Assembly (NCBI GenBank): GCA_900088475.1
Contig: FLMG01001070.1
Location: 1 to 64,000 of the forward strand
Source of the DNA: Hyphochytrium catenoides
Lineage: Eukaryota > Protista > Hyphochytriomycota
Reading direction: 5' to 3'
Length of the DNA stretch: 64,000 nucleotides
In this document: in pieces, positions 4,926 to 22,366 of the stretch
Numbering within the stretch: the stretch's first letter is position 1
How the letters are laid out: the number at the start of each line of letters is the position of its first letter
The notes under the pieces: model-generated
Databases searched by the model: none
Seen by the model: the letters and a program-made list of their open reading frames with translations, nothing else
What the model was told of the DNA's origin: nothing
Program-made: the position numbers and the translations under genes

Positions 4926-7900
4926 CTAAAAGCCTGGACCTTCTCGTAGCAGTGGACGGGTTTCCCGATCCAAATAGGCCAAAGTGCGAGAATCATCCTG
5001 CATGCAGAGAGTGGTGTCAGGAAGGGTAACTCCAGGCACAGCCTAGAATACACTCCATACGGAGACAGCTTTACGGCAAAGACCCTAAAGTCACGAAGGA
5101 GGCTAGACAAGACATTGAGCAAAAAGAGAAAGCAGCGCCCAGAAGGCTGGTGCGTGAGTAACTGTCAATTCATGGACGAAACCAGCATCTATCGAGAGCA
5201 AGAAGTAGTTTCCATCACAGCTTTCACTGATGGATGAGCCGTTTCGATATAATTTGCATTGTCTCCAATATTCAACTCTTACCTTCAGAAGCGGCGTGAG
5301 CACGCTTCTGCACCATTGATTGTAGTTGTTCAACCAGGAGAGCTCTTTGTCGGTTAGGAGTCCGCAGTCCACTAGATTAAGGGCGATCGGAACTGCTGTT
5401 ATGGTCTCAAAGCTGCAAAACTTGCCGAGCTCCGTAGCTGGAGGAGCCAACTCTGGATATCGCGGTACTCGGGTTACCTTAAGGAGAGGAATTCGTCAGA
5501 AATAGGAGGGCAAGCATCTCTGGGCGATACGTTTAGTCGTAGAGGATCAATGGTACTTTGAGGCGTGAGGCCGGTACAGCAGACGCGGACAGGATGCCTT
5601 TCATATTCAAAGCCCGTATGAAGAGGTAGGGTTTCCAAGAGTGACGATTGAGGAGGAGCACAAAAATAATGAGGGCACAGCTGGACTCCCCATATGAGGA
5701 GGCTGTGCAACCATCAAGAGTAAGGCACCTACCTCCTTACAGATACAAACTGTCTCTATCCGAATACCGAAGCTCCCAGTCTGGTAGTATCCCGGTTCAT
5801 TACTCGTCGTCATCCCAGGCTCAAAGCCGGCTTCGTAGGTAGTAGCGTCGCGTAGGGCAATGCCTTGAGGGCCCTCATGGACGTTGAGAAATGCTCCGAC
5901 ACCTTTAGCGAGGAGATTAAAAGAAGAGGTAAATGAGGCAAGTGTGGCACATGGTTGAAGTGGAACGTCTCAAATAAGGTAGGAGTTGACATCCTCTTAG
6001 TCAGAGAGAGAGGGGGAACTCTTCAGTGGAGGTGACGGAAACGACTACAGAGCCCTAGGAAAGTAGTGCGGGACTCTTCTCTAACTGACCGTGGCCTGTG
6101 CCATGCTTGTAATCCAGCCCGGAGTCCCATAGGGCCAGTCGAGCGAGAGCGTCAATATATTTCCCTTTGACACCCTGACATAGGGACGTCAGATCAGATA
6201 AAGACAAGGAATATTAACGCCGGGTGGTCTCTCCCTCTTGGAAGTTTCTTAGGCCATACCACCCGGCAAGAGAAAACAGCAGACTTGGAAACCTCGCATT
6301 AAAGTAGAAGGAAGAGGTCATCACCTTAGGAAAGACTGCAGTGGCAATGCCAATGTGACCCTTGAGCACCCGAGTGTAGCATTCCTTATGCCAAGGATTA
6401 GGCTTGCCAAGGTGGATAGTCCTAACAATTGCACGAGTGACACGTTAGGTAAAGATACTCTTAACCCGAAATTTCCTGTGTGGAGACAACAAGGAGTCCA
6501 TAGGATTGTAGTGTGAATAGGTGGGAAAATATGGAGAAAGAACCCCGAATCATCGATTGAGTGGGACCTGGTGACGTCCGTTGTTCCATCAACGTATTGG
6601 GCTCCTGAGTCGAGTAGTAACGGAGCATCAGTGCCTATGACGGCGCATGATTCGGGTACGGCCTGTAAGCACCAATGCAGCCAATAGCGTTGCAATATAT
6701 CAAGTGCAGGGAGCAGGTTAGACCCTAGGAGGCACTATATAAGAGTGGTGTGACCGATCATAGTTGTTCCTGACCTTGTAGTGGATGATGGCGCCGTTGG
6801 GTCCATAGCCAGCAATGGTCTCAAAACTCAAGCTTACAAAACCTTCTTCTTGCTTACGGAACTCTTCCAGCTTATCAGCTATTGAGCACTTGGAAATGAC
6901 AGCAAATGTCAAGAGAGTAAGGAGTTTGAGATCTAGAGTGAGCTTGAAGAAGGTTGTCGAGCTCACCTCAGTTAGCGGCCATCCCATGCCAAGCCCCTGA
7001 CCCTGCTGTCCCTGCTCTACTGCGTCTTCAAGCCATGCCAGAAACCGCACAACTGCCGCTCCATCTCGAAGATGGGCCTGGCGGAGACCTTCAAGCTCTG
7101 CCTCGTTCTTCACACTCTTTAGCATTGCGATTGGGCTCTGCTCCTGTGAAAGAGATAAGTTTCCGGAAGACCATGCATCCCTGTCTGCTATGAACCCGAA
7201 CACTAAATCCTCTGTCTCCTAACCCGGACTTTCCTACTAGCACTTCCTTTTTGACGGTCTACCTCAAGCAAGATGACGCCAACGCCTTCTAGAGCGTTGC
7301 TAAGGGCTAAACTTGTGGTGTGTGGGTCAACCATGCACTTGGACTCTGGGTAGCATTTAGTGCGAGTAAGCTACCGATAAATGACTTCAAGAGGGAAACT
7401 AGCAAGACTGACCTTTGGGCAAGTTTTTGAGATGGTCGAGAATGGCATCATACGGCATTATCCTGACCTCTGTGGGGAGATGGTCCCGAACCTGGCGTGA
7501 AGGCGGAATAGAGATGCTAGTGAATAAAGGAGGATAATGACCGAAAGGACACAGTTCTGTAGGCGAGTCGCACAGCATTCAGTAAAGTGCGCAGCTGGGG
7601 AATATGCTCTTTGTCGTACCTCTCCGCTTAGCTTTGAGTCGTCAACAAAGATGATAGACTGGTTCATAGTGACCACGGCGTAGGCCATGAACACAGGGTT
7701 GTAGTCAATATCAGAGCCGCGAAGGTTAAAGAGCCAGGCAATCTCATCCAGGCTTGAGAGAACCAAGGTCTCGGCACCCTGATGTGATTTCCTCTTTAGG
7801 CCACAACAAAAATGAGAGAAAGAGATCCATGTCCCTACCTTGTCTTGCATCTTTTTCCTAATCTCAACCAGTTTTGCTGTCGTATCCTTGCCTGCATATG

Positions 7901-8719
7901 AGATTAGAAGACTAGCATTTACTTGCTCCAACAACAAAAGGAAATAGGAAGGGAGATATGAGCCGGCATACGCGAGGATTGGAAGGCTCCAACAAACAAG
8001 CAAAAGGTCATCGACTGTAAGTAGGCACACCTGCAAGGGACAAAGGATGCACTTGGAGTGGGTTTGCTGGAGCTGCAGGTTGGTCATTCCCCCATAATGT
8101 GTCCACCGGATTAGTCACAGTGGGAACTACATTCACCCCAGTCTTCGAGAGCTTTTCTTTCCACTTCCTTGCGGATGCGAGCGTGACTAGGTAGGGATCA
8201 ATGCCAACCTTCTCGCCTGGTGATGCATTGAGCTATTACACTGCGCTGAGAGTAATAGATGGTCTTGGCAGCCTGTCATAGCCATCCATTCGTACCTTTC
8301 TTCAGCTCTTTGACAAGCCAGTCCTCAATGGACGGCGTCTCTGGATCTCCAGCTTTCATCAGCTCCCAATCTGCAGCCATTTGGGCTCTAGCCTGCACCC
8401 AGTACCTGCCATCAGTCCAAAGAGCCGCTTTCGACGCTGTCACCACCGCGGTGCCTGAGAGAAGAAAGTTATTAGCAGCATGACTATTGAGAGCTTATCG
8501 TCTCTCAAGCTCTCCATTTCCGGCTATAGTACCTGCAGAACCAGTGAACTCGGTCAAAAAAGCTCTACGCTTATCCCTGTCAGTCACATATTCCGACTGA
8601 TGTGCGTCGGCCGAGCCACAGACAAAAGCATCAACGCCAATGGCAGCGAGAATCTCTCTGAACTTGGTAAGCTTCTGTCCAGCTCGGACGACTTGCTTGG
8701 TGCCGCTAGACGTAGCCAT
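4926..8719 (-). CDS. Xaa-Pro aminopeptidase (aminopeptidase P, M24B; multi-exon)
   Basis: ADAHQSEYV..RRAFLTEFTGSAG, WTDGRY, LDEIAWLFNLRGSDIDYNPVF, LLDSGAQYVDGTTDVTR, HGTGH, SNEPGYY..GSFGIRIE; last exon DDSRTLAYLDRETRPLLREGPGF* ends at 4926. Confidence 0.95.
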
Positions 8720-10995: not shown

Positions 10996-12427
10996 ATGTT
11001 AGGTGAAAGGCTTACTTCTTCGCAAGCTGCGAAGGCTACTTGGATGGCCATATCGCTATATAGTTTTTCGGCATTCCTGAGGCCAAGTGAGAGCCACTGT
11101 CAGCGAGAGCCAGCTCAACCTGAAAGGGCGTCCTCACAATCACTAGATGGAGAATTTCTGCCTCCTCGCAATCTAGGGAGGAAAAGGAGCCGTTCAGAGA
11201 AGAAACGGGCCCCCAGTCTTCTTGTCAGTCGTGCGGCTGCCCGAGGCGACCGGTCTCATATGGAAGACACAAACGTCGTAGCGCTGGAGAATCGCTTTCT
11301 TGCTGTGTTTGACGGGTGAGTCCTGTGACATAGACTACATTGACACTTTCTATTAAGAGGCTTGTGGTACACTCACTTCTTAGGCACGGAGGAGCCGATG
11401 TTTCAAAATACCTTCGCAACGGATTCTATGCCAAACTTGCCGCCAAATTCCCATCAATGATCAGCCCCAATACCATTGATGAGGATATTACCAAGGTGTA
11501 TCTGGAAGAGACAGTAAATGAGATTGATACTGAAATATGTGCAAGAGAAGATATGCATGAACAAGGGTCAACCGCAGTTATAGCGCTAATTGGGGATGAG
11601 TATATCTGGACTGTAAACGTAGGGGACTCTCGTGCTTTCCTTTGTAGCGGAGGCTCCGTTCGGAGCGAGACGAAGGATCACAAGCCTGACGACCCCATGG
11701 AGAGGCAACGTATAGAAAGTGTCGGTGGCAAGGTGATCTGGGTTGGCTGGACCGACCCCGAGGGCAACCCTATCAAAGACTTTGGCGCCTACCGCATGAA
11801 CGGCAACCTCGGTCAGATGCTCACACTTACTCCCTACATATTCTTGCGCAAGTCTGCCTCACATCGTACTCTGGTGACGCCTTCCTAGAGTTGGTTGGGT
11901 TTGCTCTTGTTTCAAGCGAGGGCAGCTAATCCGTTCGCCTCGTATTCCCGTTTCTGTGGCTCTTTGTGTTTCTGTGGCTCTTTTGGCTCCCGAATCCTTT
12001 TCAATAGTTAACACTAAGATTTCTGTCGACAGCTGTGGCACGATCAATAGGGGACAAGTATGAACGTCCTTACGTCACCAGTACCCCGGACATTGTAAAG
12101 CTAAAACGGGACCCCGACCGCGATGATTTCATGGTTCTCGCTTCAGATGGTCTCTGGGATGTCATGGACCCGCAGGACGTACTGAAGTTCGTCCGAGGGA
12201 TTCTTTCCAGCTCGGCCATTGGGGCGAGAGGGACGTGGAGGAATGCTCCGCAGGAGTCGAGTCAAGTCTCCATGAAAGAGTGGACCAGACAATATGGAAC
12301 GGATAGGACGATGATAAAGGCTGTCTTTCGTAAGAGAAAAGAAAACATGGCGGAGTACCTAGTAGAGGAAGCTCTAAATCGCGGCTCGTGTGACAATATC
12401 ACTGTTGTCATAGTGTTTTTTCATTAG
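10996..12427 (+). CDS. Protein phosphatase 2C (PPM family), 3 exons
   Basis: RSHMED, AVFDG|HGG, GSTAV, NVGDSRA, DHKP, ARSIGD, LASDGLWDV, GSCDNITV. Confidence 0.95.
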
Positions 12428-14090
12428 CGGAGAACTAGCGAAGGTAAGGCACGGTGCACCAGGTAGCAAAGAGCGAAGCCATCTCTAACTGAAACTTGAT
12501 TCCTTCATACAGCTACTGTGCCAGATTTGCAGATGAAAGGGGGAGTACTACGATGGGAACTTTTGGCAAGGATCGGGGGGGGGTCCGTGAGGAAAGTCTA
12601 ACACAGCATGGTGTCGAGATTGACCAGTACTCTGAGACCTGTGAAGAAATGCCTTTATTCTTACTCGTCAATACGCGTACGTAGGCACAGAGTGACACAG
12701 CTCAAGAACTAGCCATAGGGACGTGCCAGAGCCACAGGGCTACTCCATAATAGGCCAAGTATAGTTGGCATACACAGTTGACAGACACAATTAGCAGAGC
12801 AACATGCCCTCCTTATGTTCTAGCGAGCAAGGTCATCTGTCCTAGTGATGTGATGAAATCAGCACATCCTTGCCGTCATGCGAAAGCAGGCTTGCAGAGA
12901 TTGAGAGGACCCCAACAAACTCCAATGGTAGCTTATAACTCACCTCGAGTTCTTAAGGAACTCTGAACAAGAGAACTCACTAGGCAGCTTGAGACACAGT
13001 TGCTTTGGAGCTCTAGTGGTGCTCTTGATGATTGCATGGTTCCTGAACGAAGGAGACAGCAGCGAGCAGCGCGTTAAGATAGAGAGCAGCAAGTGCACTT
13101 ATTCCTGCTGCTTCTTGAGGCAAGGTGACGTTTGGGCAGGCACGAGACAGTCTGTGATAAAACAGTAACTGTTCAGACCTCCGGCTGCCCGCTAACGGTC
13201 CTATATTGGTTGTGGAGCAGACTCTGACTGACTGCAGCTGTCATTTTGGCCAGATGATATTTATGATAACAGTCACGAGAACAGTAATGAATGGGAAGAT
13301 TAGTCGTTCTTATTCTGCATCGCTCAGTCCAATTGGGATACAAAATTTTAGGGGCAGGAACCGCCACTTGCACCAGGATTGAAGTCGTAGATTAACCGCC
13401 AAGAGCTTCTCTTCTCTGTAAAGCCAGTTCCCTATGTAGACCCAATAATACGCCGCTTAGGTTGGGCTTTCAAGGCAATACAAAGGATCTGAGTCCATTA
13501 ATCCTCCGCCTTATTAGTTTGTCCTCCACGTATCGAATAGGTACCAGATCCCAACTCGTACTCCGCCAGGGTCTTTGTGAATCCATCTCTCTCTCTCCCT
13601 TTCCCTCCTTCTTCCCTCCTTGTACTTTCGATCTTCTACAAAACAGAACATGGCCTGCCTCTTCCTCTCTCTCTGCTCCTCTGTCTGTCTCGCTCCTGGC
13701 CTGCTGTACGGGAAGAGCCTGTCTCGCTGAGCTTTACAGTCTATCTCGTGCCTTTCTATCTTCCACGTCCCTGTCTCCCCTCCATAAAGGATGATGGTCA
13801 TCTCTACCTCCTCTGTCTCTCCCCCTCCCGTTTCTGAGTACGTATTGTCTACGAAGATGGACCCACAATCATCCATCTCTTACCTCTCTGTCTGTCGCCT
13901 ACCCTGCCCGCCCTTGTCTCTCTACCATTTTTCCCTCAGTGTTCTATGTCCATCCTTTGTCCCTCCTCTCACTGTGCATTCGCCCACCCCGCACTGTCAG
14001 GACATGCCATGCCGCCTTCTTTATCTAGAGTGTGTTACTAGCCCAGCCCTTCTTGATGGAAAGGAGCATCATCATCTTTGGCCCTGGAAC

Positions 14091-14134
<44 letters not shown>

Positions 14135-14792
14135 CTCTCTCTCTCGCTCTCTCGCTCTCTCTCTGTGTCGCTCCTTTTCCTTCCATTCCATTCTCTCCTC
14201 TTTTATTGACTTGCTACTGTCTCTCTTCTCTTGTCTTCTGCTCCTTTTCTCTCATGCCTCTCTCTCTCCTCTTCCTGTCTCTCCCCTCTTTATCCTTCTT
14301 CCTCACACACTCTCTCGTCCCCTTCGCTCTGTCTGTCTCTCCTCTCTTCTCTGTGGCGACTCATCCTCACCTCTTCTGTTCGGCTGGTTGTTCTGCTACA
14401 GCCCTTGTTCATCCTCTTTCCCCACTGCATCTTTCTTTCCCGACAAAGGTATACACAGAGTACAACAGAGTAGCCCGGCTGGCTGGACTTAGAAGCCTGT
14501 TGCAGATCACGCTCTGGCCCAAGTTTTTTCTGCATTCGTCTGGACAAGTGTGCAGTCAAGCAGAAGAAGAGCCAGATCCAAAGAGTCTCGCTGATGACGT
14601 GCATTTTTGAAGATTCATTGCAACCTGAAAGGAAGGACGTTTGAGGAAGCAAGGTTGATAATGGATTAGCAACGAAAAGACTGGTTCGTTGTCCTTTATT
14701 GCTCAGATTAGCGACAGATTCTTCTCCGTCTACCGATCTTAGTATTCTACACGTTCTATCGTCTTCCTAGTGGGCACTGGTCGGTGAAGCTT

Positions 14793-17644
14793 ATGGCGGG
14801 CCAAAGGTAAGAACTGAAGATTGATAGTGTAGGGCAACTTATGGCGTCTGCTATCCATTCTAACGGCAAGGTTGTCACTCTGCTGTAGGCAAGGATCCTA
14901 CAAACTCAGTGCAAAGGGATCCAATGCAGAGAGCTTTAAATCTGCTCACAGCACACAAAGCCCTGCGCTAGTCTCGTCCTTACCTAGCCACAACCCGTCC
15001 CTCGTTGGCGCTTCGGAGTCAAGCGCGCCGGACTCTCCCGGAGTGAATCATGACACACAGATCCCAGTAACAGGAATCAAGAAAGAAAGCTCTGAAGCTG
15101 TGTTGAATGAGCCGGAAGGTGAGGAGAGAAGGTTTAGCCAAGAAAGGAGGCCGGCGACATCCGAGAAGGCAGTCTTGAGGATAGTGGAAGGGGAGAAGGA
15201 TAGAGAACAGACCAGCACGTTCAGTGCGTCCACCTATCATGAGACGATCGGAACAGACTATGGCAAGTCGACTGCAGTCTTTACCGAGGATGACACCGGC
15301 AGCGTGGAGAACGACGGGCAGCCGAAGAAGCAAGTGATAGGTAGGCAATAGAAGACCACTTCAACTGCACAATCTCTCTTTGGTGTCACAGTCCTTTGGT
15401 ACTGGCATGTCTCTGTCCGAATCCTCACATAATATCGTCTGTTGTCGTCAGTTGGACGGTGTACAACTGAGAATCATGTCTCCTTCTTTGCATCCTCTGT
15501 ACTATTTCTTCTCCGTTGTCCTCGCCACCTGACGGATCTCTATCTTTTTTCTCTACGCCGCCTCTGCCCCGCCAATGCGTTCAAGTCTAACGTCGTCTTA
15601 ACCTTAATTGCTTCCTCCACGTTCTCTATGTAAAGCAGAAGAAGAATCAGAGAAAGAGAGTCACGAGTTTGATCACCCTACGTTATACTTGGATGACCAT
15701 GGCGTTCTGCGCCATAAGAACTCTGACACGACGGTGACGGATGTGGAATTCTACTCGTTGGGCGAGGAGCTCTTGCACTCGCTAGAGGAGCATGTAGAGA
15801 GCAAGATGATGCGCCAGTTTGGCCTTAAGTGCTTTTACATGCCTTCGAAGGAGGCATCTCTACACTCCACACTCTTTGTCTCTGAGGACTACCAGCGATG
15901 CGATAAAGTTGTGGTCTTCGTCGGTGCATGCCGTGGTGCACGACCTGGTGTATGGAGTCGAAGTGTACTCGTTCGACTGGGTATCCAGAAGGGCTCTATG
16001 CTACCGTACTTTGCGGTTGCCCAGAGTCAGAACTACGGGATCGTAGTGCTGAATCCTAGCAACACAAGCACGCTGACGACGGACCCGGTGACGGGTGAAA
16101 AGGTTAAGAGGCTTATACCATGCTCTTCAACTCCTGAAGAGCATATGGTATCAGCTTGGGACTATTGCCTCGCTGACACCCATGCGAGCAAGATCTCCTT
16201 TGTCTGCTATGCCTACGGGGGGCTGCTGACCAAGCATCTGCTAAGAGAGAGGCTGCCGGAGATTTTCCCCCGCTTCAACGGCGCTGTCTTTATTGAGTCA
16301 AACATTTCTGTCCTGGACACTGATCCCAATGCCCTCCAGAGTATGCTGCTGCAACAGTGCATTCGGTGGGAATCTTCATATGAGCCGTTTGGCTCACTGA
16401 TTTCCAACGATCCCAATGCCTGCGTCATCCTCTCTGCAGCAAAGAAGCCAAGCGACCATTCTAACTCGGGCTACCTGGTGGACAGACTTCTGTTTCAGTC
16501 CTTCAACTTCTTAGAATATGGCAATGCCACCGTGTTTGCCACAGAGCTCGCTAGGCGGCTGCGGTCCACAAGAACAAAGAGTGCCCCGGACAATGCGGAT
16601 GTCCATATTACCCATCGACAGTTCGATAAGCTGACTGTCGAAGACTTTGAGTTGCTGAAGGTGATAGGCAAGGGTGCATTCGGGAAAGTGATGTTGGTCA
16701 GGAAGAAAGAAGGTGCGAACGTCGGAGAGATCTTCGCCCTGAAGGTGCTGAAGAAAGCTGCAGTGTTCGCAAAGAAGCAGGTCGACCACACGATAACGGA
16801 GAGAAGAATCTTGAAGGAGATCAAGCATCCATTCATTGTCGACCTTCGCTTTGCCTTTCAGACAGACGAGAAGCTCTACATTGTAATGGACTATTACCCT
16901 GGAGGCTCTCTCTTCTTCCATTTGAGGAAATGCCAGAGATTTAGTGAGGGCAGGGCCCGTTTCTATGCGGCAGAGCTGCTGCTCGCTCTCCATCACCTGC
17001 ACAAATATAACATTGCCTATCGGGATCTCAAGCTTGAGAACATACTAATGGATGCTGAGGGCCATGTGGCACTGACGGACTTCGGCTTATCGAAGGAGAA
17101 CGTAGAGGTGCCTGACAGCGTTAAGACTTTCTGCGGTACAGCAGAATACATTGCTCCGGAGCTACTCAGGGGCCAGGGTTATGGCAAAGCTGTTGATTGG
17201 TGGGGCTTCGGCATCTTGGTCTACGAGATGATTGCGGGCCGGACACCATTCTATGACAAGAACAGGAAGCGCATGTTTCACTTCATCCTTCACCGGGAAG
17301 TCGCCTTTCCGCCCTTCTTCTCTGAAAATGCGAAGTCTCTTCTCGTAGGGCTTCTGAAGAAGAGTCCTTCAGAGAGACTGGGTTTTAAGGGCTGGGAGGA
17401 GATCATAGATCATCCCTTCTTTGCAGAGATCGACTTTGATGCGTTGATGAACAAGCAGGTGACGCCGCCGTTCAAGCCACGGGTGGCCGATGAGATGGAT
17501 ACAGGCAACGTAGCAACAGTCTTCACGCGCGAAGTCCCTCAGGACACGCCGGTGCCTAGAGGTCAGATGGACGCTAAGCAAGCCAAGGCTTTTGAGGGCT
17601 TCACCTACATTCCTGACAGTCAGCTGAATGTGCCAGGAGCCTAG
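14793..17644 (+). CDS. Arb2/FAM172-like domain fused to an AGC-family Ser/Thr kinase (Akt/SGK/S6K-like, no PH domain)
   Basis: Exons ~14793-14806, ~14890-15340, ~15639-17644. Arb2-like motifs RPGVWSR, GSMLPY, YGIVVLNP, TPEEH..AWD, CYAYGG; kinase motifs GKGAFGKV, ALK, YRDLKLEN, DFG, TFCGTAEYIAPE, hydrophobic motif FEGFTY. Both domains lie in one uninterrupted exon. Confidence 0.9.
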
Positions 17645-20632: not shown

Positions 20633-22366
20633 TCAGCTAAGGACTTCATGTTGCTCTCTTGCTTCTTCGGCTAGAGCAGACTTCGCGAAGTTCTTCACAG
20701 CCCGAAGCTGGAGCTCTTCCCTATTTAGTGGACGATCTCCATCATCCACCTCCGACTCATCTCCAGAATTGAGATCTTCAGCGGCCGGTGCAGACACTTG
20801 TAGCGGACCTAGGAGTGGAGATTGCTCTTGCTCCACTATCGTGGATCGGACAATGTCATCTATTGTCCTGTCATCGCCTTCGGGCCTTGAGAAGTCTGTG
20901 AGTTTCTGTTCAATGATCTCTAAGCACTGCATAAGGTTAGAGGCCGTAGTTCCTTGCACAGGCATCTCTTCCGGAGATCCAGTCGCATCTAAGCGGTTAA
21001 AGATACTCTGTATGCCACCCTTGAGTACATTCAGCTCTTCCATCGACTCTTCATACTTCTTCTGATACTCGACTATGTGCACCTCGGCAGCGAGATACTT
21101 AGCGTCCAGCGTGCGAAGTAGCTTCTTACGCTGGGCATCAGTGTTAAAGTCTTGGCCCTTTAGATGCTCCAGTTCTGACTTCCTTTCTATAAGACGAAGC
21201 TCGACCCGTGCGATTTCAGAGTTGAGATTGTTCACATACTTATACAACGAGAAAATCTTGTCCTCCCCTTCAAGAAATTGGTCGATCTAGAGAGTGGAAG
21301 CGTTATAGAAAGTCCATTCGCGGAAGAACAAAGTTAGAAGAAGCTGAGTGGTACCAGGTAGAGACCGAACGAAGAAGAAAGGCAGCAAGAGCAGTTAGGT
21401 TTAGACCCACGAAGAGACATGGGGCTGCTGCAGTACACTTGGAGGAGTAGTAAACGTGAGAGAGTGTCCTACCAGACTATCAACATCCAGCACACCGTCG
21501 GCATTTCTCAACATCTTTAGTTGATTCTCGTACTGCTGGAGCTTCTCGCTTGTCAGCTTGGTCTTAGATTTCTCGTTGAGAAACTCCCATTGTGACCTAA
21601 TGACTCTTTTTTTGATCTTATCCTCTTGCTCTACGCTCAGAATGCCCACAGGATTGGCCAGGCTTTCCTGAGACACTGCTCCTTCAACGCCTTCCTGAGC
21701 CCTTTGGAGCTTTTTCTTCTCATCGGATACCGCCTGACCCAGTCTGTCCCATTCCGTGCGGAAGTGTTCCCTTCTTAGCTTGGCTTGCTCATGGAGGGAG
21801 CGAAGTTTAGCGTGACATTGGTCTCTCTCATCAAGCGCGGCTCTGGTATCTCGGAAGGACTGTGCGATCTCTTTCTTCATCTCATGGATCTGTCGTTCCA
21901 GATTGCGATATATCTTGTCAAAGCAAGCTCTGTCTCGTCTGTAGCTGTTGATCTGCTCTCTCACGAAGTTATTCTCACTAATTGTCTTGTTTAGCTTCAT
22001 CAGTGCCTTGTCAACCCGCTGATGGATTAGCTTTGACTGCTTCGACAGCAGAAGGTCGTTCTCCTTGAAAGCATTAATGCCTCCTCCTACTTCTTTTCTC
22101 TCCTCTTCTACCCGGGTCTGCAGCATGCGAAGCCTTGCCTGAGTTTGCTGAACCTTCTTTTTCTCCGCATCACGCTTCCTGGCATAGACGGCCAATTGGT
22201 CCTCTAACTGCTTTAGTACTTCCGCTGCAGCGAAGGTTTGGTTGGGTTTCACGCTCTGAACACGATTCACTAGCTCAATTCGGAGCTCCTCCGTCTCCTC
22301 CTTGAACTTTTCAACTACTTGGTGCTGCTCCTGCAAAGACCTGGGCAAGCGCTTGAGGACAGGCAT
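20633..22366 (-). CDS. ODA1: Outer dynein arm docking complex subunit (ODA1/DC2, CCDC114/CCDC63 family), 2 exons (22366-21473, 21286-20633)
   Basis: Coiled coil with VDKALMKLNKTISENNFVREQINSYRRDRACFDKIYRNLE and FLEGEDKIFSLYKYVNNLNSEI, then RPLNREEL near the C-terminus. Confidence 0.85.

What the first reader, a model, noticed from the sequence alone, without database searches (positions are those of the whole stretch)
15639..17644. Arb2/FAM172 silencing-associated domain fused to a complete AGC kinase
Seen: one exon encodes an Arb2/FAM172A-like alpha/beta-hydrolase-fold domain (~15680-16520) followed directly by an AGC kinase with activation-loop TFCGT, turn-motif DTP and hydrophobic motif FEGFTY. 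A single exon rules out a gene-model fusion artefact. Known: Arb2 domains occur in S. pombe Arb2 (Argonaute chaperone complex), the C-terminus of fungal Hda1/Clr3 and metazoan FAM172A (AGO2-associated). Inference: the domain occupies the slot of the PH/PX regulatory module of Akt/SGK, suggesting a PDK1/TOR-regulated kinase recruited to Argonaute or chromatin. I know of no characterised example, though unannotated stramenopile homologs may exist.
Basis: partly seen in the sequence, partly recalled or inferred. Interest (0 to 1): 0.75.

Follow-up and report, generated by a model that had tools for sequence, protein, structure and literature searches.

The report
Arb2-domain AGC kinase, stramenopile family
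This is a real, intact gene for a growth-signalling (Akt/SGK/S6K-like) protein kinase with a catalytically dead Arb2/FAM172-type domain at its front; the design was reported in water moulds in 2010 and is widespread in their relatives, so it is one more member, not a new invention.

Summary
One ORF (15608-17644, +) encodes an Arb2 domain (Pfam PF22749, E 4e-24), then a complete AGC kinase with Pkinase_C. All catalytic and regulatory motifs are intact. An AlphaFold model of the N-terminal domain (pLDDT 91) matches the solved Arb2 domains of Hda1 and Clr3 best (Z 18) and FAM172A-type models (TM 0.77).

The gene probably has two short upstream exons (ATG at 14793). This is read from the sequence only; no RNA data were found.

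The architecture is not new. Judelson & Ah-Fong (2010) described an Arb2-AGC kinase in Phytophthora. I found it in at least eight classes across oomycetes and ochrophyte algae, some with FYVE, C2 or PH modules added.

One member has been studied. PsYPK1 of P. sojae was published as having an "N-terminal region of unknown function", but its orthologs score as Arb2 (E 4e-37). That region binds G-alpha and keeps the kinase out of the nucleus.

In the window protein the hydrolase nucleophile is Ala, so the domain is non-catalytic. It most likely serves docking or localisation. The Argonaute/chromatin idea has no support here.

An earlier follow-up on a paralogue in this genome reached the same 2010 paper. 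Verdict: new member of a known kind, modest interest.

The parts
14793..14806 (+). Proposed exon 1: start codon ATG and 14 coding bases (MAGQ..), donor AAG|GTAAGA
   Evidence: Read from the sequence. Frame check of the three-exon model gives 823 codons and a single terminal stop. No RNA support.
14889..15340 (+). Proposed exon 2: Ser/Glu-rich N-terminal region of about 150 aa with no recognisable domain. Acceptor CTGTAG|, donor ATAG|GTAGGC.
   Evidence: Open frame 14872-15351. No Pfam family. Splice phases match exons 1 and 3.
15639..17644 (+). Exon 3: the rest of the protein (Arb2 domain, linker, kinase, C-terminal tail, stop TAG). Acceptor AAGCAG| at 15633-15638.
   Evidence: ORF 15608-17644. 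Homology to relatives is continuous across the whole exon, so no hidden intron.
15659..16573 (+). Arb2 domain (ORF residues ~18-322), alpha/beta-hydrolase fold
   Evidence: Pfam PF22749, E 4e-24. AlphaFold pLDDT 90.9, pTM 0.90. Foldseek top five hits are Clr3, Hda1 and the HDA1 complex. VIA-align Z 18.4 to 5j8j against <=14.2 for generic hydrolases. ESM Atlas TM 0.77 to a chordate Arb2 cluster.
16205..16222 (+). Degenerate nucleophile elbow CYAYGG (residues 200-205), with Ala202 where a serine hydrolase has its Ser
   Evidence: Column counts over 97 Arb2 domains of relatives: Gly 58, Ser 21, Asp 12, Ala 3. Per-class motifs.
16574..16645 (+). Short linker of ~24 residues between Arb2 and the kinase. 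No FYVE, C2 or PH module.
   Evidence: pLDDT under 50 at residues 325-338. Pfam finds nothing here. Class A relatives carry a FYVE finger at this position.
16646..17422 (+). Protein kinase catalytic domain (residues 347-605) with all catalytic residues: GKGAFG, K379, E398, YRDLKLEN, DFG, APE
   Evidence: Pfam Pkinase E 5.5e-69. Motif scan. Best solved relatives are AKT2 (E 4e-103), S6K1 and SGK1.
17126..17140 (+). Activation-loop motif TFCGT (T507, the PDK1-type phospho-acceptor of AGC kinases)
   Evidence: T507 is invariant in 97 relatives.
17483..17608 (+). AGC C-terminal tail (Pkinase_C, residues 626-667), with turn motif T647-P (17546-17551) and hydrophobic motif FEGFTY (17591-17608)
   Evidence: Pfam PF00433 E 2.5e-7. 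Motif scan. Sequence read.

Best explanation
The locus is a functional three-exon gene for an AGC protein kinase of the Akt/S6K/SGK type. Its regulatory N-terminal module is an Arb2/FAM172-type alpha/beta-hydrolase-fold domain that has lost its catalytic serine.

Shown: both domains are real and intact, and they lie in one exon. The gene belongs to a large stramenopile family of Arb2-AGC kinases and sits nearest the oomycete Arb2-FYVE-'AGC/AKT' class, but it has no FYVE finger.

Inferred for the kinase: it is switched on like other AGC kinases. That means phosphorylation of the activation loop (T507) by a PDK1-type kinase, and of the turn and hydrophobic motifs (T647, T666) by a TOR-complex-type kinase.

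Inferred for the Arb2 domain: it works as a non-enzymatic docking module tethered to the kinase by a flexible ~24-residue linker. It would decide where the kinase sits and which partner holds it, and it may also dimerise. The precedent is P. sojae PsYPK1, whose Arb2-containing N-terminal region binds the G-alpha subunit and keeps the kinase cytoplasmic.
For: Domains and motifs.

Fold: model pLDDT 90.9. Hda1 and Clr3 Arb2 domains rank top in Foldseek (E 2e-8) and in VIA-align (Z 18.4/18.2, against <=14.2 for generic hydrolases). TM 0.77-0.79 to ESM Atlas Arb2 clusters.

Family: all 120 best relatives carry Arb2 plus kinase. The Arb2 profile finds 2044 representative proteins at E<=1e-3 and 439 at E<=1e-30. 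The ESM Atlas has a 245-member 'Arb2/Protein kinase' cluster, mostly Oomycota. The combination was published in 2010 (PMC3019232).

Placement: in the kinase tree the window is sister to the Arb2-FYVE-AKT class (SH-aLRT 90, up to 68% identity). Its Arb2 domain also scores best against that class (160-184 bits against <=141 for the others).

Dead hydrolase: Ala at the nucleophile position.

Flexible tether: the full-length model has pLDDT 90 but pTM only 0.62, with a low-confidence linker.

PsYPK1 precedent: the paper reports G-alpha binding and cytoplasmic retention by the N-terminal region. The printed PsYPK1 sequence carries the Arb2 hallmarks. Its orthologs P0324 and P0243 score Pfam Arb2 at E 3.7e-37 and 2.5e-38. 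P0324 aligns to the window's Arb2 domain at E 3e-34.
Against: There is no expression or splice evidence. No RNA run was found, and only two 151-nt near-identical contigs turned up in one public run.

The window's Arb2 domain is unusually divergent. Its branch is 1.52 changes per column against a median of 0.16. It also departs at three positions that are conserved in relatives: Asn to Thr153 (Asn in 94 of 97), Gly to Ala278 (Gly in 94 of 97) and His to Ile233 (His in 65 of 97). The domain may therefore have a changed or weakened function.

PsYPK1 belongs to a different, distant class. Its G-alpha binding was mapped only to residues 2-303, which include a 130-residue extension the window protein lacks. 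So binding by the Arb2 fold itself is not proven.

Placement next to class A is not firm: an AU test does not reject grouping with the FYVE-less Saprolegniales class (p 0.07).

PDK1 and TOR dependence is inferred from motif conservation only.
Confidence: 0.7

Rival explanations
1. One reading: the Arb2 domain recruits the kinase to Argonaute or to chromatin, linking PDK1/TOR signalling to RNA silencing or histone marks.
For: Characterised Arb2 proteins act there. The Hda1 Arb2 domain binds histones (PMC5036196). FAM172A binds AGO2 and controls its nuclear import (PMC10205598). The fold match to these proteins is strong. PsYPK1 does shuttle to the nucleus.
Against: No Argonaute or histone link was found for any Arb2-AGC kinase. 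In PsYPK1, deleting residues 2-303 (which takes out part of the Arb2 domain) increases nuclear localisation, so this region is not needed for nuclear entry. Sister classes combine the same domain with FYVE, C2 and PH modules, which bind membrane lipids. Sequence identity to Hda1 and Clr3 Arb2 is only 12-13%, so binding surfaces need not be shared.
Confidence: 0.08
2. The Arb2 domain mainly drives homodimerisation, as in Hda1, Clr3 and FAM172A. This would bring two kinase domains together for trans-activation. It is compatible with the main explanation.
For: Homodimerisation through a conserved Arb2 sub-region is reported for Hda1, Clr3 and FAM172A. The window model aligns over 213 of the 244 residues of the Hda1 Arb2 chain.
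Against: This was not tested here: no multimer prediction was available, and model coordinates could not be inspected. Conservation of the dimer 'arm' was not assessed.
Confidence: 0.12
3. A bifunctional enzyme: an active serine esterase or lipase fused to a kinase.
For: The fold is alpha/beta-hydrolase. Two classes (Arb2-FYVE-AKT with GYSYGG, PsYPK1 class with AYSFGA) keep a Ser in a G/A-x-S-x-G elbow. Several polar residues around the canonical site are near-invariant: S117, R118, H179, E230, S276.
Against: The window protein has Ala at the nucleophile position. 76 of 97 relatives also lack Ser there. No Arb2 protein has a demonstrated hydrolase activity in the papers read.
Confidence: 0.03
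4. A decaying, redundant paralogue on its way to becoming a pseudogene, in a genome that (by earlier scan notes) holds several other Arb2-AGC genes.
For: The Arb2 branch is very long, and three positions that are conserved in relatives have changed. No transcript evidence.
Against: 678 codons are open. Every catalytic and regulatory kinase residue is intact, including the positions invariant in 97 relatives. The Arb2 model is confidently folded. The two differences listed in a near-identical sequence from another run, at 16036 and 16042, are both third-position C>T changes and hence synonymous.
Confidence: 0.05

Closest known systems
Oomycete Arb2-AGC kinases (P. infestans PITG_06776; Judelson & Ah-Fong 2010, PMC3019232)
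   Same: N-terminal Arb2 domain followed by an AGC kinase in one polypeptide. Found in the stramenopile lineage. Function of the Arb2 part untested.
   Different: The window gene comes from a genome whose proteins are not in the databases searched (best full-length identity 42-47%). It falls outside all sampled oomycete classes, as sister to the FYVE-bearing one. The 2010 paper counted two such proteins in P. infestans. With the current Pfam model the domain appears in at least eight classes, and also in ochrophyte algae.
Oomycete Arb2-FYVE-'AGC/AKT' kinases (e.g. P0001 Bremia, P0006 P. nicotianae, P0013 Aphanomyces)
   Same: Nearest relatives for both the kinase domain (63-68% identity; SH-aLRT 90 sister group) and the Arb2 domain (32% identity, 160-184 bits).
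   Different: They carry a FYVE zinc finger in a ~150-residue linker and keep Ser in the elbow (GYSYGG). The window protein has a ~24-residue linker, no FYVE, and Ala (CYAYGG).
PsYPK1 of Phytophthora sojae (Ps350990; Qiu et al. 2020, PMC7010300)
   Same: AGC kinase with Arb2 in the N-terminal half; orthologs score Pfam Arb2 at E ~1e-37. It is the only member found whose N-terminal region has been tested. That region binds G-alpha PsGPA1 and controls the nucleus/cytoplasm distribution.
   Different: It is a distant paralogous class on a long separate branch. It has an extra 130-residue N-terminal extension and a ~140-residue linker, and it keeps Ser in the elbow. The authors did not recognise the domain. 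The binding site was not mapped to the Arb2 fold itself.
Metazoan FAM172A, and fungal Arb2 / Hda1 / Clr3 Arb2 domains
   Same: Same fold (Z 18 to Hda1/Clr3; TM 0.77 to the chordate Arb2 cluster) and the same Pfam family.
   Different: Those are stand-alone proteins or are fused to a deacetylase, and they act with Argonaute, histones or chromatin. Here the domain is fused to a kinase, and sequence identity to them is only 12-13%.
Akt/PKB, SGK3, S6K (animal AGC kinases)
   Same: Catalytic domain about equally close to all three (E 4e-103, 1.5e-95, 5e-97). The same T-loop, turn and hydrophobic motifs.
   Different: No PH domain (Akt) and no PX domain (SGK3). The N-terminal module is Arb2 instead.

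Membership tests
Arb2 domain (Pfam PF22749) | Score above the curated Pfam gathering threshold | tested here: met
   85.7 bits for the whole protein and 88.1 bits for the N-terminal part alone, against a cut-off of 26.8.
Arb2 domain (Pfam PF22749) | Alpha/beta-sandwich fold closer to solved Arb2 domains than to generic hydrolases | tested here: met
   5j8j Z 18.4 (213 residues, 3.8 A), 5ikk Z 18.2; the best non-Arb2 chain scores Z 14.2. Foldseek top five are all Arb2-bearing chains.
Arb2 domain (Pfam PF22749) | Binding of Argonaute or histones (the property that named the family) | not testable with these tools
   Needs pull-down or ITC. Nothing in the sequence speaks for or against it.
AGC protein kinases | Intact catalytic core (Gly loop, VAIK Lys, alpha-C Glu, HRD/YRD, DFG, APE) | tested here: met
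   GKGAFG 354, K379, E398, YRDLKLEN 471, DFG 491, APE 516. All lie in invariant columns of 97 relatives.
AGC protein kinases | C-terminal tail with turn motif and hydrophobic motif F-x-x-F-S/T-Y/F, plus a T-loop Thr | tested here: met
   Pkinase_C E 2.5e-7. T507 in TFCGT, T647-P, FEGFTY at 662-667.
Akt/PKB proper | N-terminal PH domain | tested here: not met
   No PH hit in the ORF or in the upstream exon.
Stramenopile Arb2-AGC kinases | Arb2 N-terminal to an AGC kinase in one polypeptide | tested here: met
   Both domains lie in one ORF. All 120 best relatives share the arrangement.
Oomycete Arb2-FYVE-AGC/AKT class | FYVE zinc finger between Arb2 and kinase | tested here: not met
   No PF01363 hit. 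The linker is ~24 residues with no Cys cluster.
Oomycete Arb2-FYVE-AGC/AKT class | Phylogenetic grouping with the class | tested here: inconclusive
   Sister to the class with SH-aLRT 90, but an AU test does not reject grouping with the Saprolegniales FYVE-less class (p 0.07).
Serine hydrolases of the alpha/beta-hydrolase fold | Nucleophile Ser in a G-x-S-x-G elbow | tested here: not met
   CYAYGG with Ala202.

The most novel reading that the evidence does not exclude
The dead-hydrolase Arb2 domain may be a conserved docking site for heterotrimeric G-protein alpha subunits, or more broadly a nucleus/cytoplasm retention module. Under this reading, the whole stramenopile Arb2-AGC family, this gene included, would be direct G-protein effectors. 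The link between FAM172A and AGO2 nuclear import would then reflect the same ancestral role of Arb2 in nucleocytoplasmic partitioning.
Probability: 0.12. Interest if true: 0.6.

Novelty: new member of a known kind. Interest (0 to 1): 0.3.

Why it matters
For this gene alone, little changes: it is one more Arb2-AGC kinase, and the combination has been in print since 2010 and is catalogued automatically (for example as an ESM Atlas cluster).

Two side results are useful to people working on oomycete signalling. First, the family is much larger and older than the two P. infestans proteins counted in 2010. There are at least eight architectural classes (plain, +FYVE, +C2+FYVE, +PH-PH, with inserts, and others). 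Every holder named in the databases searched is a stramenopile: oomycetes, bolidophytes, pinguiophytes, chrysophytes, pelagophytes and eustigmatophytes. Second, PsYPK1's published 'N-terminal region of unknown function', which binds G-alpha and controls nuclear entry, contains an Arb2 domain. This gives the first experimental handle on what the domain does when fused to a kinase, and it points away from the Argonaute/chromatin expectation.

Tried and rejected
- **RNA evidence.** The look-up of sequencing runs returned one run with a 0.05 word share. Read laying placed only two 151-nt contigs inside the Arb2 exon. That gives no splice or expression information.
- **PDB sequence search with the Arb2 region.** Only chance-level hits, E about 1. 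The relationship is visible only through profiles and fold.
- **Word-based protein search restricted to the Arb2 region.** One hit. This is uninformative because too few exact words are shared. It was replaced by the exhaustive profile search.
- **First attempt to translate 16600-17641.** Out of frame; repeated in frame.
- **Looking for PsYPK1 among the first 178 proteins by short motifs.** Absent. Its orthologs were recovered only through the profile search.
- **Running the PsYPK1 sequence itself through Pfam.** Left out. It exists only as printed text in a supplement and has no reference, so the orthologs P0324 and P0243 were scanned instead.
- **Confident Arb2-kinase packing, which would suggest Akt-like autoinhibition.** Not found: pTM 0.62 with a disordered linker. 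This is weak negative evidence only.
- **Firm assignment to the FYVE class.** The AU test against the alternative gave p 0.07, so the placement stays open.
- **The joined three-exon protein.** Used only for an in-script frame check.
- **Pfam on ten proteins at once.** Exceeded the size limit; repeated with nine.
Full report
**1. What is in the sequence**

The + strand holds one uninterrupted ORF, 15608-17644, of 678 codons ending in TAG. Pfam finds three domains, each far above its curated cut-off:
- Arb2 (PF22749) at ORF residues 57-260: E 4.2e-24, 85.7 bits, cut-off 26.8.
- Pkinase at 347-605: E 5.5e-69.
- Pkinase_C at 626-667: E 2.5e-7.

Homology to the Arb2 domains of relatives covers residues ~18-322. 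That leaves only a ~24-residue linker before the kinase.

The kinase has every catalytic element: GKGAFG, K379, E398, YRDLKLEN, DFG and APE. These residues sit in columns that are invariant across 97 relatives. Among solved structures the catalytic domain is about equally close to AKT2 (E 4e-103), S6K1 (5e-97) and SGK1 (1.5e-95). I therefore call it Akt/S6K/SGK-like rather than Akt.

**2. Gene model**

The ORF has no in-frame ATG before residue 67, yet Arb2 homology begins at residue ~18, so the start must lie upstream. Reading the sequence and checking frames in a script gives three exons with GT..AG borders and consistent phases:
- Exon 1, 14793-14806: ATG, donor AAG|GTAAGA.
- Exon 2, 14889-15340: acceptor CTGTAG|, donor ATAG|GTAGGC.
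- Exon 3, 15639-17644: acceptor AAGCAG|.

The product is 823 residues. Exon 2 encodes a Ser/Glu-rich stretch with no Pfam family.

The model is not confirmed by RNA. The only public run holding any of the stretch gave two 151-nt contigs inside the Arb2 exon. The two differences listed there, at 16036 and 16042, are third-position C>T changes and hence synonymous.

**3. The N-terminal domain is a true Arb2 fold and a dead hydrolase**

An AlphaFold model of residues 1-341, built on 97 aligned relatives, has pLDDT 90.9 and pTM 0.90.
- Foldseek against the PDB ranks Clr3 (5ikk, E 2e-8), the Hda1 Arb2 domain (5j8j) and three chains of the HDA1 complex first. Generic alpha/beta hydrolases follow.
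- VIA-align gives Z 18.4 (213 residues, 3.8 A) for 5j8j and Z 18.2 for 5ikk, against at most 14.2 for the best non-Arb2 chain.
- In the ESM Atlas the nearest clusters are 'Arb2/Protein kinase' (245 members, mostly Oomycota, TM 0.79) and a chordate Arb2 cluster of ~409-residue proteins, the FAM172A type (TM 0.77).

The canonical nucleophile elbow reads CYAYGG, with Ala where a serine hydrolase needs Ser. Across 97 relatives that column is Gly 58, Ser 21, Asp 12, Ala 3. Ser survives mainly in two classes, GYSYGG and AYSFGA.

Several polar residues around the canonical site are nearly invariant: S117, R118, H179, E230 and S276. This hints at a conserved, non-catalytic binding site.

The window protein departs at three positions that are conserved in relatives: Asn to Thr153 (Asn in 94 of 97), Gly to Ala278 (Gly in 94 of 97) and His to Ile233 (His in 65 of 97). 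Its Arb2 branch is very long, 1.52 changes per column against a median of 0.16.

**4. Relatives and range**

All 120 best database relatives carry both Arb2 and a kinase. The best full-length identity is only 42-47%, so this organism's own proteins are not in the database.

A profile of the Arb2 domains, searched exhaustively, finds 2044 representative proteins at E<=1e-3 and 439 at E<=1e-30.

Domain scans and sequence inspection show at least eight arrangements:
- Arb2-kinase with a short linker.
- Arb2-kinase with a long linker.
- Arb2 with an internal insert, then kinase.
- Arb2-FYVE-kinase (annotated 'AGC/AKT').
- Arb2-C2-FYVE-kinase (annotated 'PKC' or 'RAC').
- PH-PH-Arb2-kinase.
- The PsYPK1 type, with an N-terminal extension.
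- PH-PH-Arb2 proteins in which Pfam finds no kinase (P0262).

Every holder that carries an organism name is a stramenopile. These are many oomycetes, plus Triparma, Pinguiococcus, Ochromonas, Aureoumbra and Nannochloropsis.

In a kinase-domain tree the window protein is sister to the oomycete Arb2-FYVE-AKT class (SH-aLRT 90, up to 68% identity). Its Arb2 domain also scores highest against that class (160-184 bits against <=141 for the others; nearest by path). The two domains thus tell the same story, which fits inheritance as one cassette.

The placement is not firm. An AU test does not reject grouping with the FYVE-less Saprolegniales class (p 0.07).

Earlier scan notes call this genome hyphochytrid-like oomycete kin. 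A position just outside all sampled oomycetes is consistent with that, but I did not verify the organism. Those notes also list several other Arb2-AGC genes in the same genome, including one with FYVE. This gene may therefore be a FYVE-less paralogue; I could not test that.

**5. What is already known**

Judelson & Ah-Fong (2010, PMC3019232) listed Arb2 among novel accessory domains of P. infestans kinases. They described the AGC kinase PITG_06776 with an N-terminal Arb2 domain and orthologs in other Phytophthora species and Hyaloperonospora. I read that paper before seeing that an earlier follow-up in this scan (s1-336123, on a paralogue) had cited the same work.

A second link appears not to have been made in print. 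[quoted passage not shown]
- The first ~400 residues printed in that paper's S1 table carry the Arb2 hallmarks PGIWSRDLL, GSMLPV, VLNPSTNN, SSPDEHMLYVWDN, FLAYSFGA and CLSVG.
- I could not submit printed text to a tool, so I recovered its orthologs through the profile search.
- P0324 (P. ramorum, 844 aa) scores Arb2 at 128-367 (E 3.7e-37), plus Pkinase and Pkinase_C. P0243 (P. cactorum), which begins MADSRR like PsYPK1 and has the same motifs at the same positions, scores Arb2 at 133-372 (E 2.5e-38).
- The P0324 segment displayed is nearly identical to the printed PsYPK1 text. It aligns to the window's Arb2 domain at 30% identity, E 3e-34.

In PsYPK1, deleting residues 2-303 abolishes binding to the G-alpha subunit PsGPA1 and sends the kinase into the nucleus. 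Residues 1-542 suffice for binding.

The caveat is that 2-303 covers a 130-residue extension plus about 60% of the Arb2 fold. Binding by the fold itself is therefore not proven. PsYPK1 is also a distant paralogue of the window gene.

**6. How it most likely works**

Shown: an intact AGC kinase with a folded, non-catalytic Arb2 domain, tethered by a short linker that AlphaFold treats as flexible. The full-length model has pLDDT 90.1 but pTM 0.62, with residues 325-338 below 50.

Inferred: activation follows the general AGC scheme, with PDK1-type phosphorylation of T507 and TOR-complex-type phosphorylation of T647 and T666. The Arb2 domain acts as a docking, localisation or dimerisation module that sets where the kinase acts and with whom. 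I put this at about 0.7.

The Argonaute/chromatin reading (about 0.08) has no support from this family. Sister classes add membrane-lipid modules to the same cassette. The one tested member enters the nucleus better without its N-terminal region.

An active hydrolase is unlikely for this gene because of the Ala elbow. A decaying paralogue is unlikely given the intact 678-codon frame and perfect kinase motifs, though the fast-evolving Arb2 domain keeps it on the list.

**7. Surroundings**

Neighbouring ORFs:

| Position | Strand | What it is |
|---|---|---|
| 11340-12427 | + | PP2C phosphatase gene in at least two exon fragments |
| about 13500-14600 | . | CT-rich tract with a (CT)36 microsatellite at 14093-14164, just before the proposed start |
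| 20636-22366 | - | ODAD1-type coiled-coil (outer dynein arm docking) gene |

Nothing suggests a functional link, and eukaryotic neighbours need not be related.

**8. Verdict**

This is a new member of a kind known since 2010, of modest interest. The main added value is the wider map of the family and the recognition that PsYPK1's functional N-terminal region contains an Arb2 domain.

Noticed in passing
Literature / P0324, P0243 (not in the window): PsYPK1 of Phytophthora sojae was published in 2020 as having an N-terminal region of unknown function that binds G-alpha. That region contains a clear Arb2 domain: orthologs score Pfam Arb2 at E ~1e-37. The authors did not note it.
   Followed up: yes
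window 14093-14164 (within a CT-rich tract, about 13500-14600): A (CT)36 microsatellite and a strongly skewed pyrimidine-rich tract (GC skew -0.45, AT skew -0.47) lie directly upstream of the proposed start codon. This is probably the promoter or 5' UTR region.
   Followed up: partly
window 11340-11888 and 12035-12427 (+): Two ORF fragments match consecutive parts of the PP2C phosphatase profile (E 1e-18 and 6e-19). They form a spliced PP2C gene immediately upstream of the kinase gene, on the same strand.
   Followed up: no
window 20636-21247 and 21404-22366 (-): Two ORFs match consecutive parts of the ODAD1 central coiled coil (outer dynein arm docking complex). This is a flagellar gene, consistent with a zoospore-forming organism.
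   Followed up: no
window 7461-8087 (-): An ORF with a Creatinase/Prolidase N-terminal domain (E 5e-28), probably an exon of an Xaa-Pro aminopeptidase gene.
   Followed up: no
P0243 (Phytophthora cactorum KAG6972647.1): This gene model joins the PsYPK1-type N-terminus and Arb2 domain to a PBD and RhoGAP domain instead of a kinase. It is either a mis-merged annotation or a real alternative architecture.
   Followed up: no
P0262 (Lagenidium giganteum, 1385 aa), P0196 (Aphanomyces astaci, 2041 aa): Long Arb2-bearing proteins that the databases name 'PH domain-containing'. Pfam on P0262 finds PH and Arb2 but no kinase; P0196 was not scanned with Pfam and gave no kinase hit in phmmer. The Arb2 domain is thus also combined with lipid-binding modules outside the kinase family.
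   Followed up: partly
window 15957-16107 and 16404-16554: One public run of 2019 (coded X1) holds two 151-nt contigs 98.7-99.3% identical to the Arb2 exon. The same organism or a very close relative is present at low abundance in that sample.
   Followed up: partly
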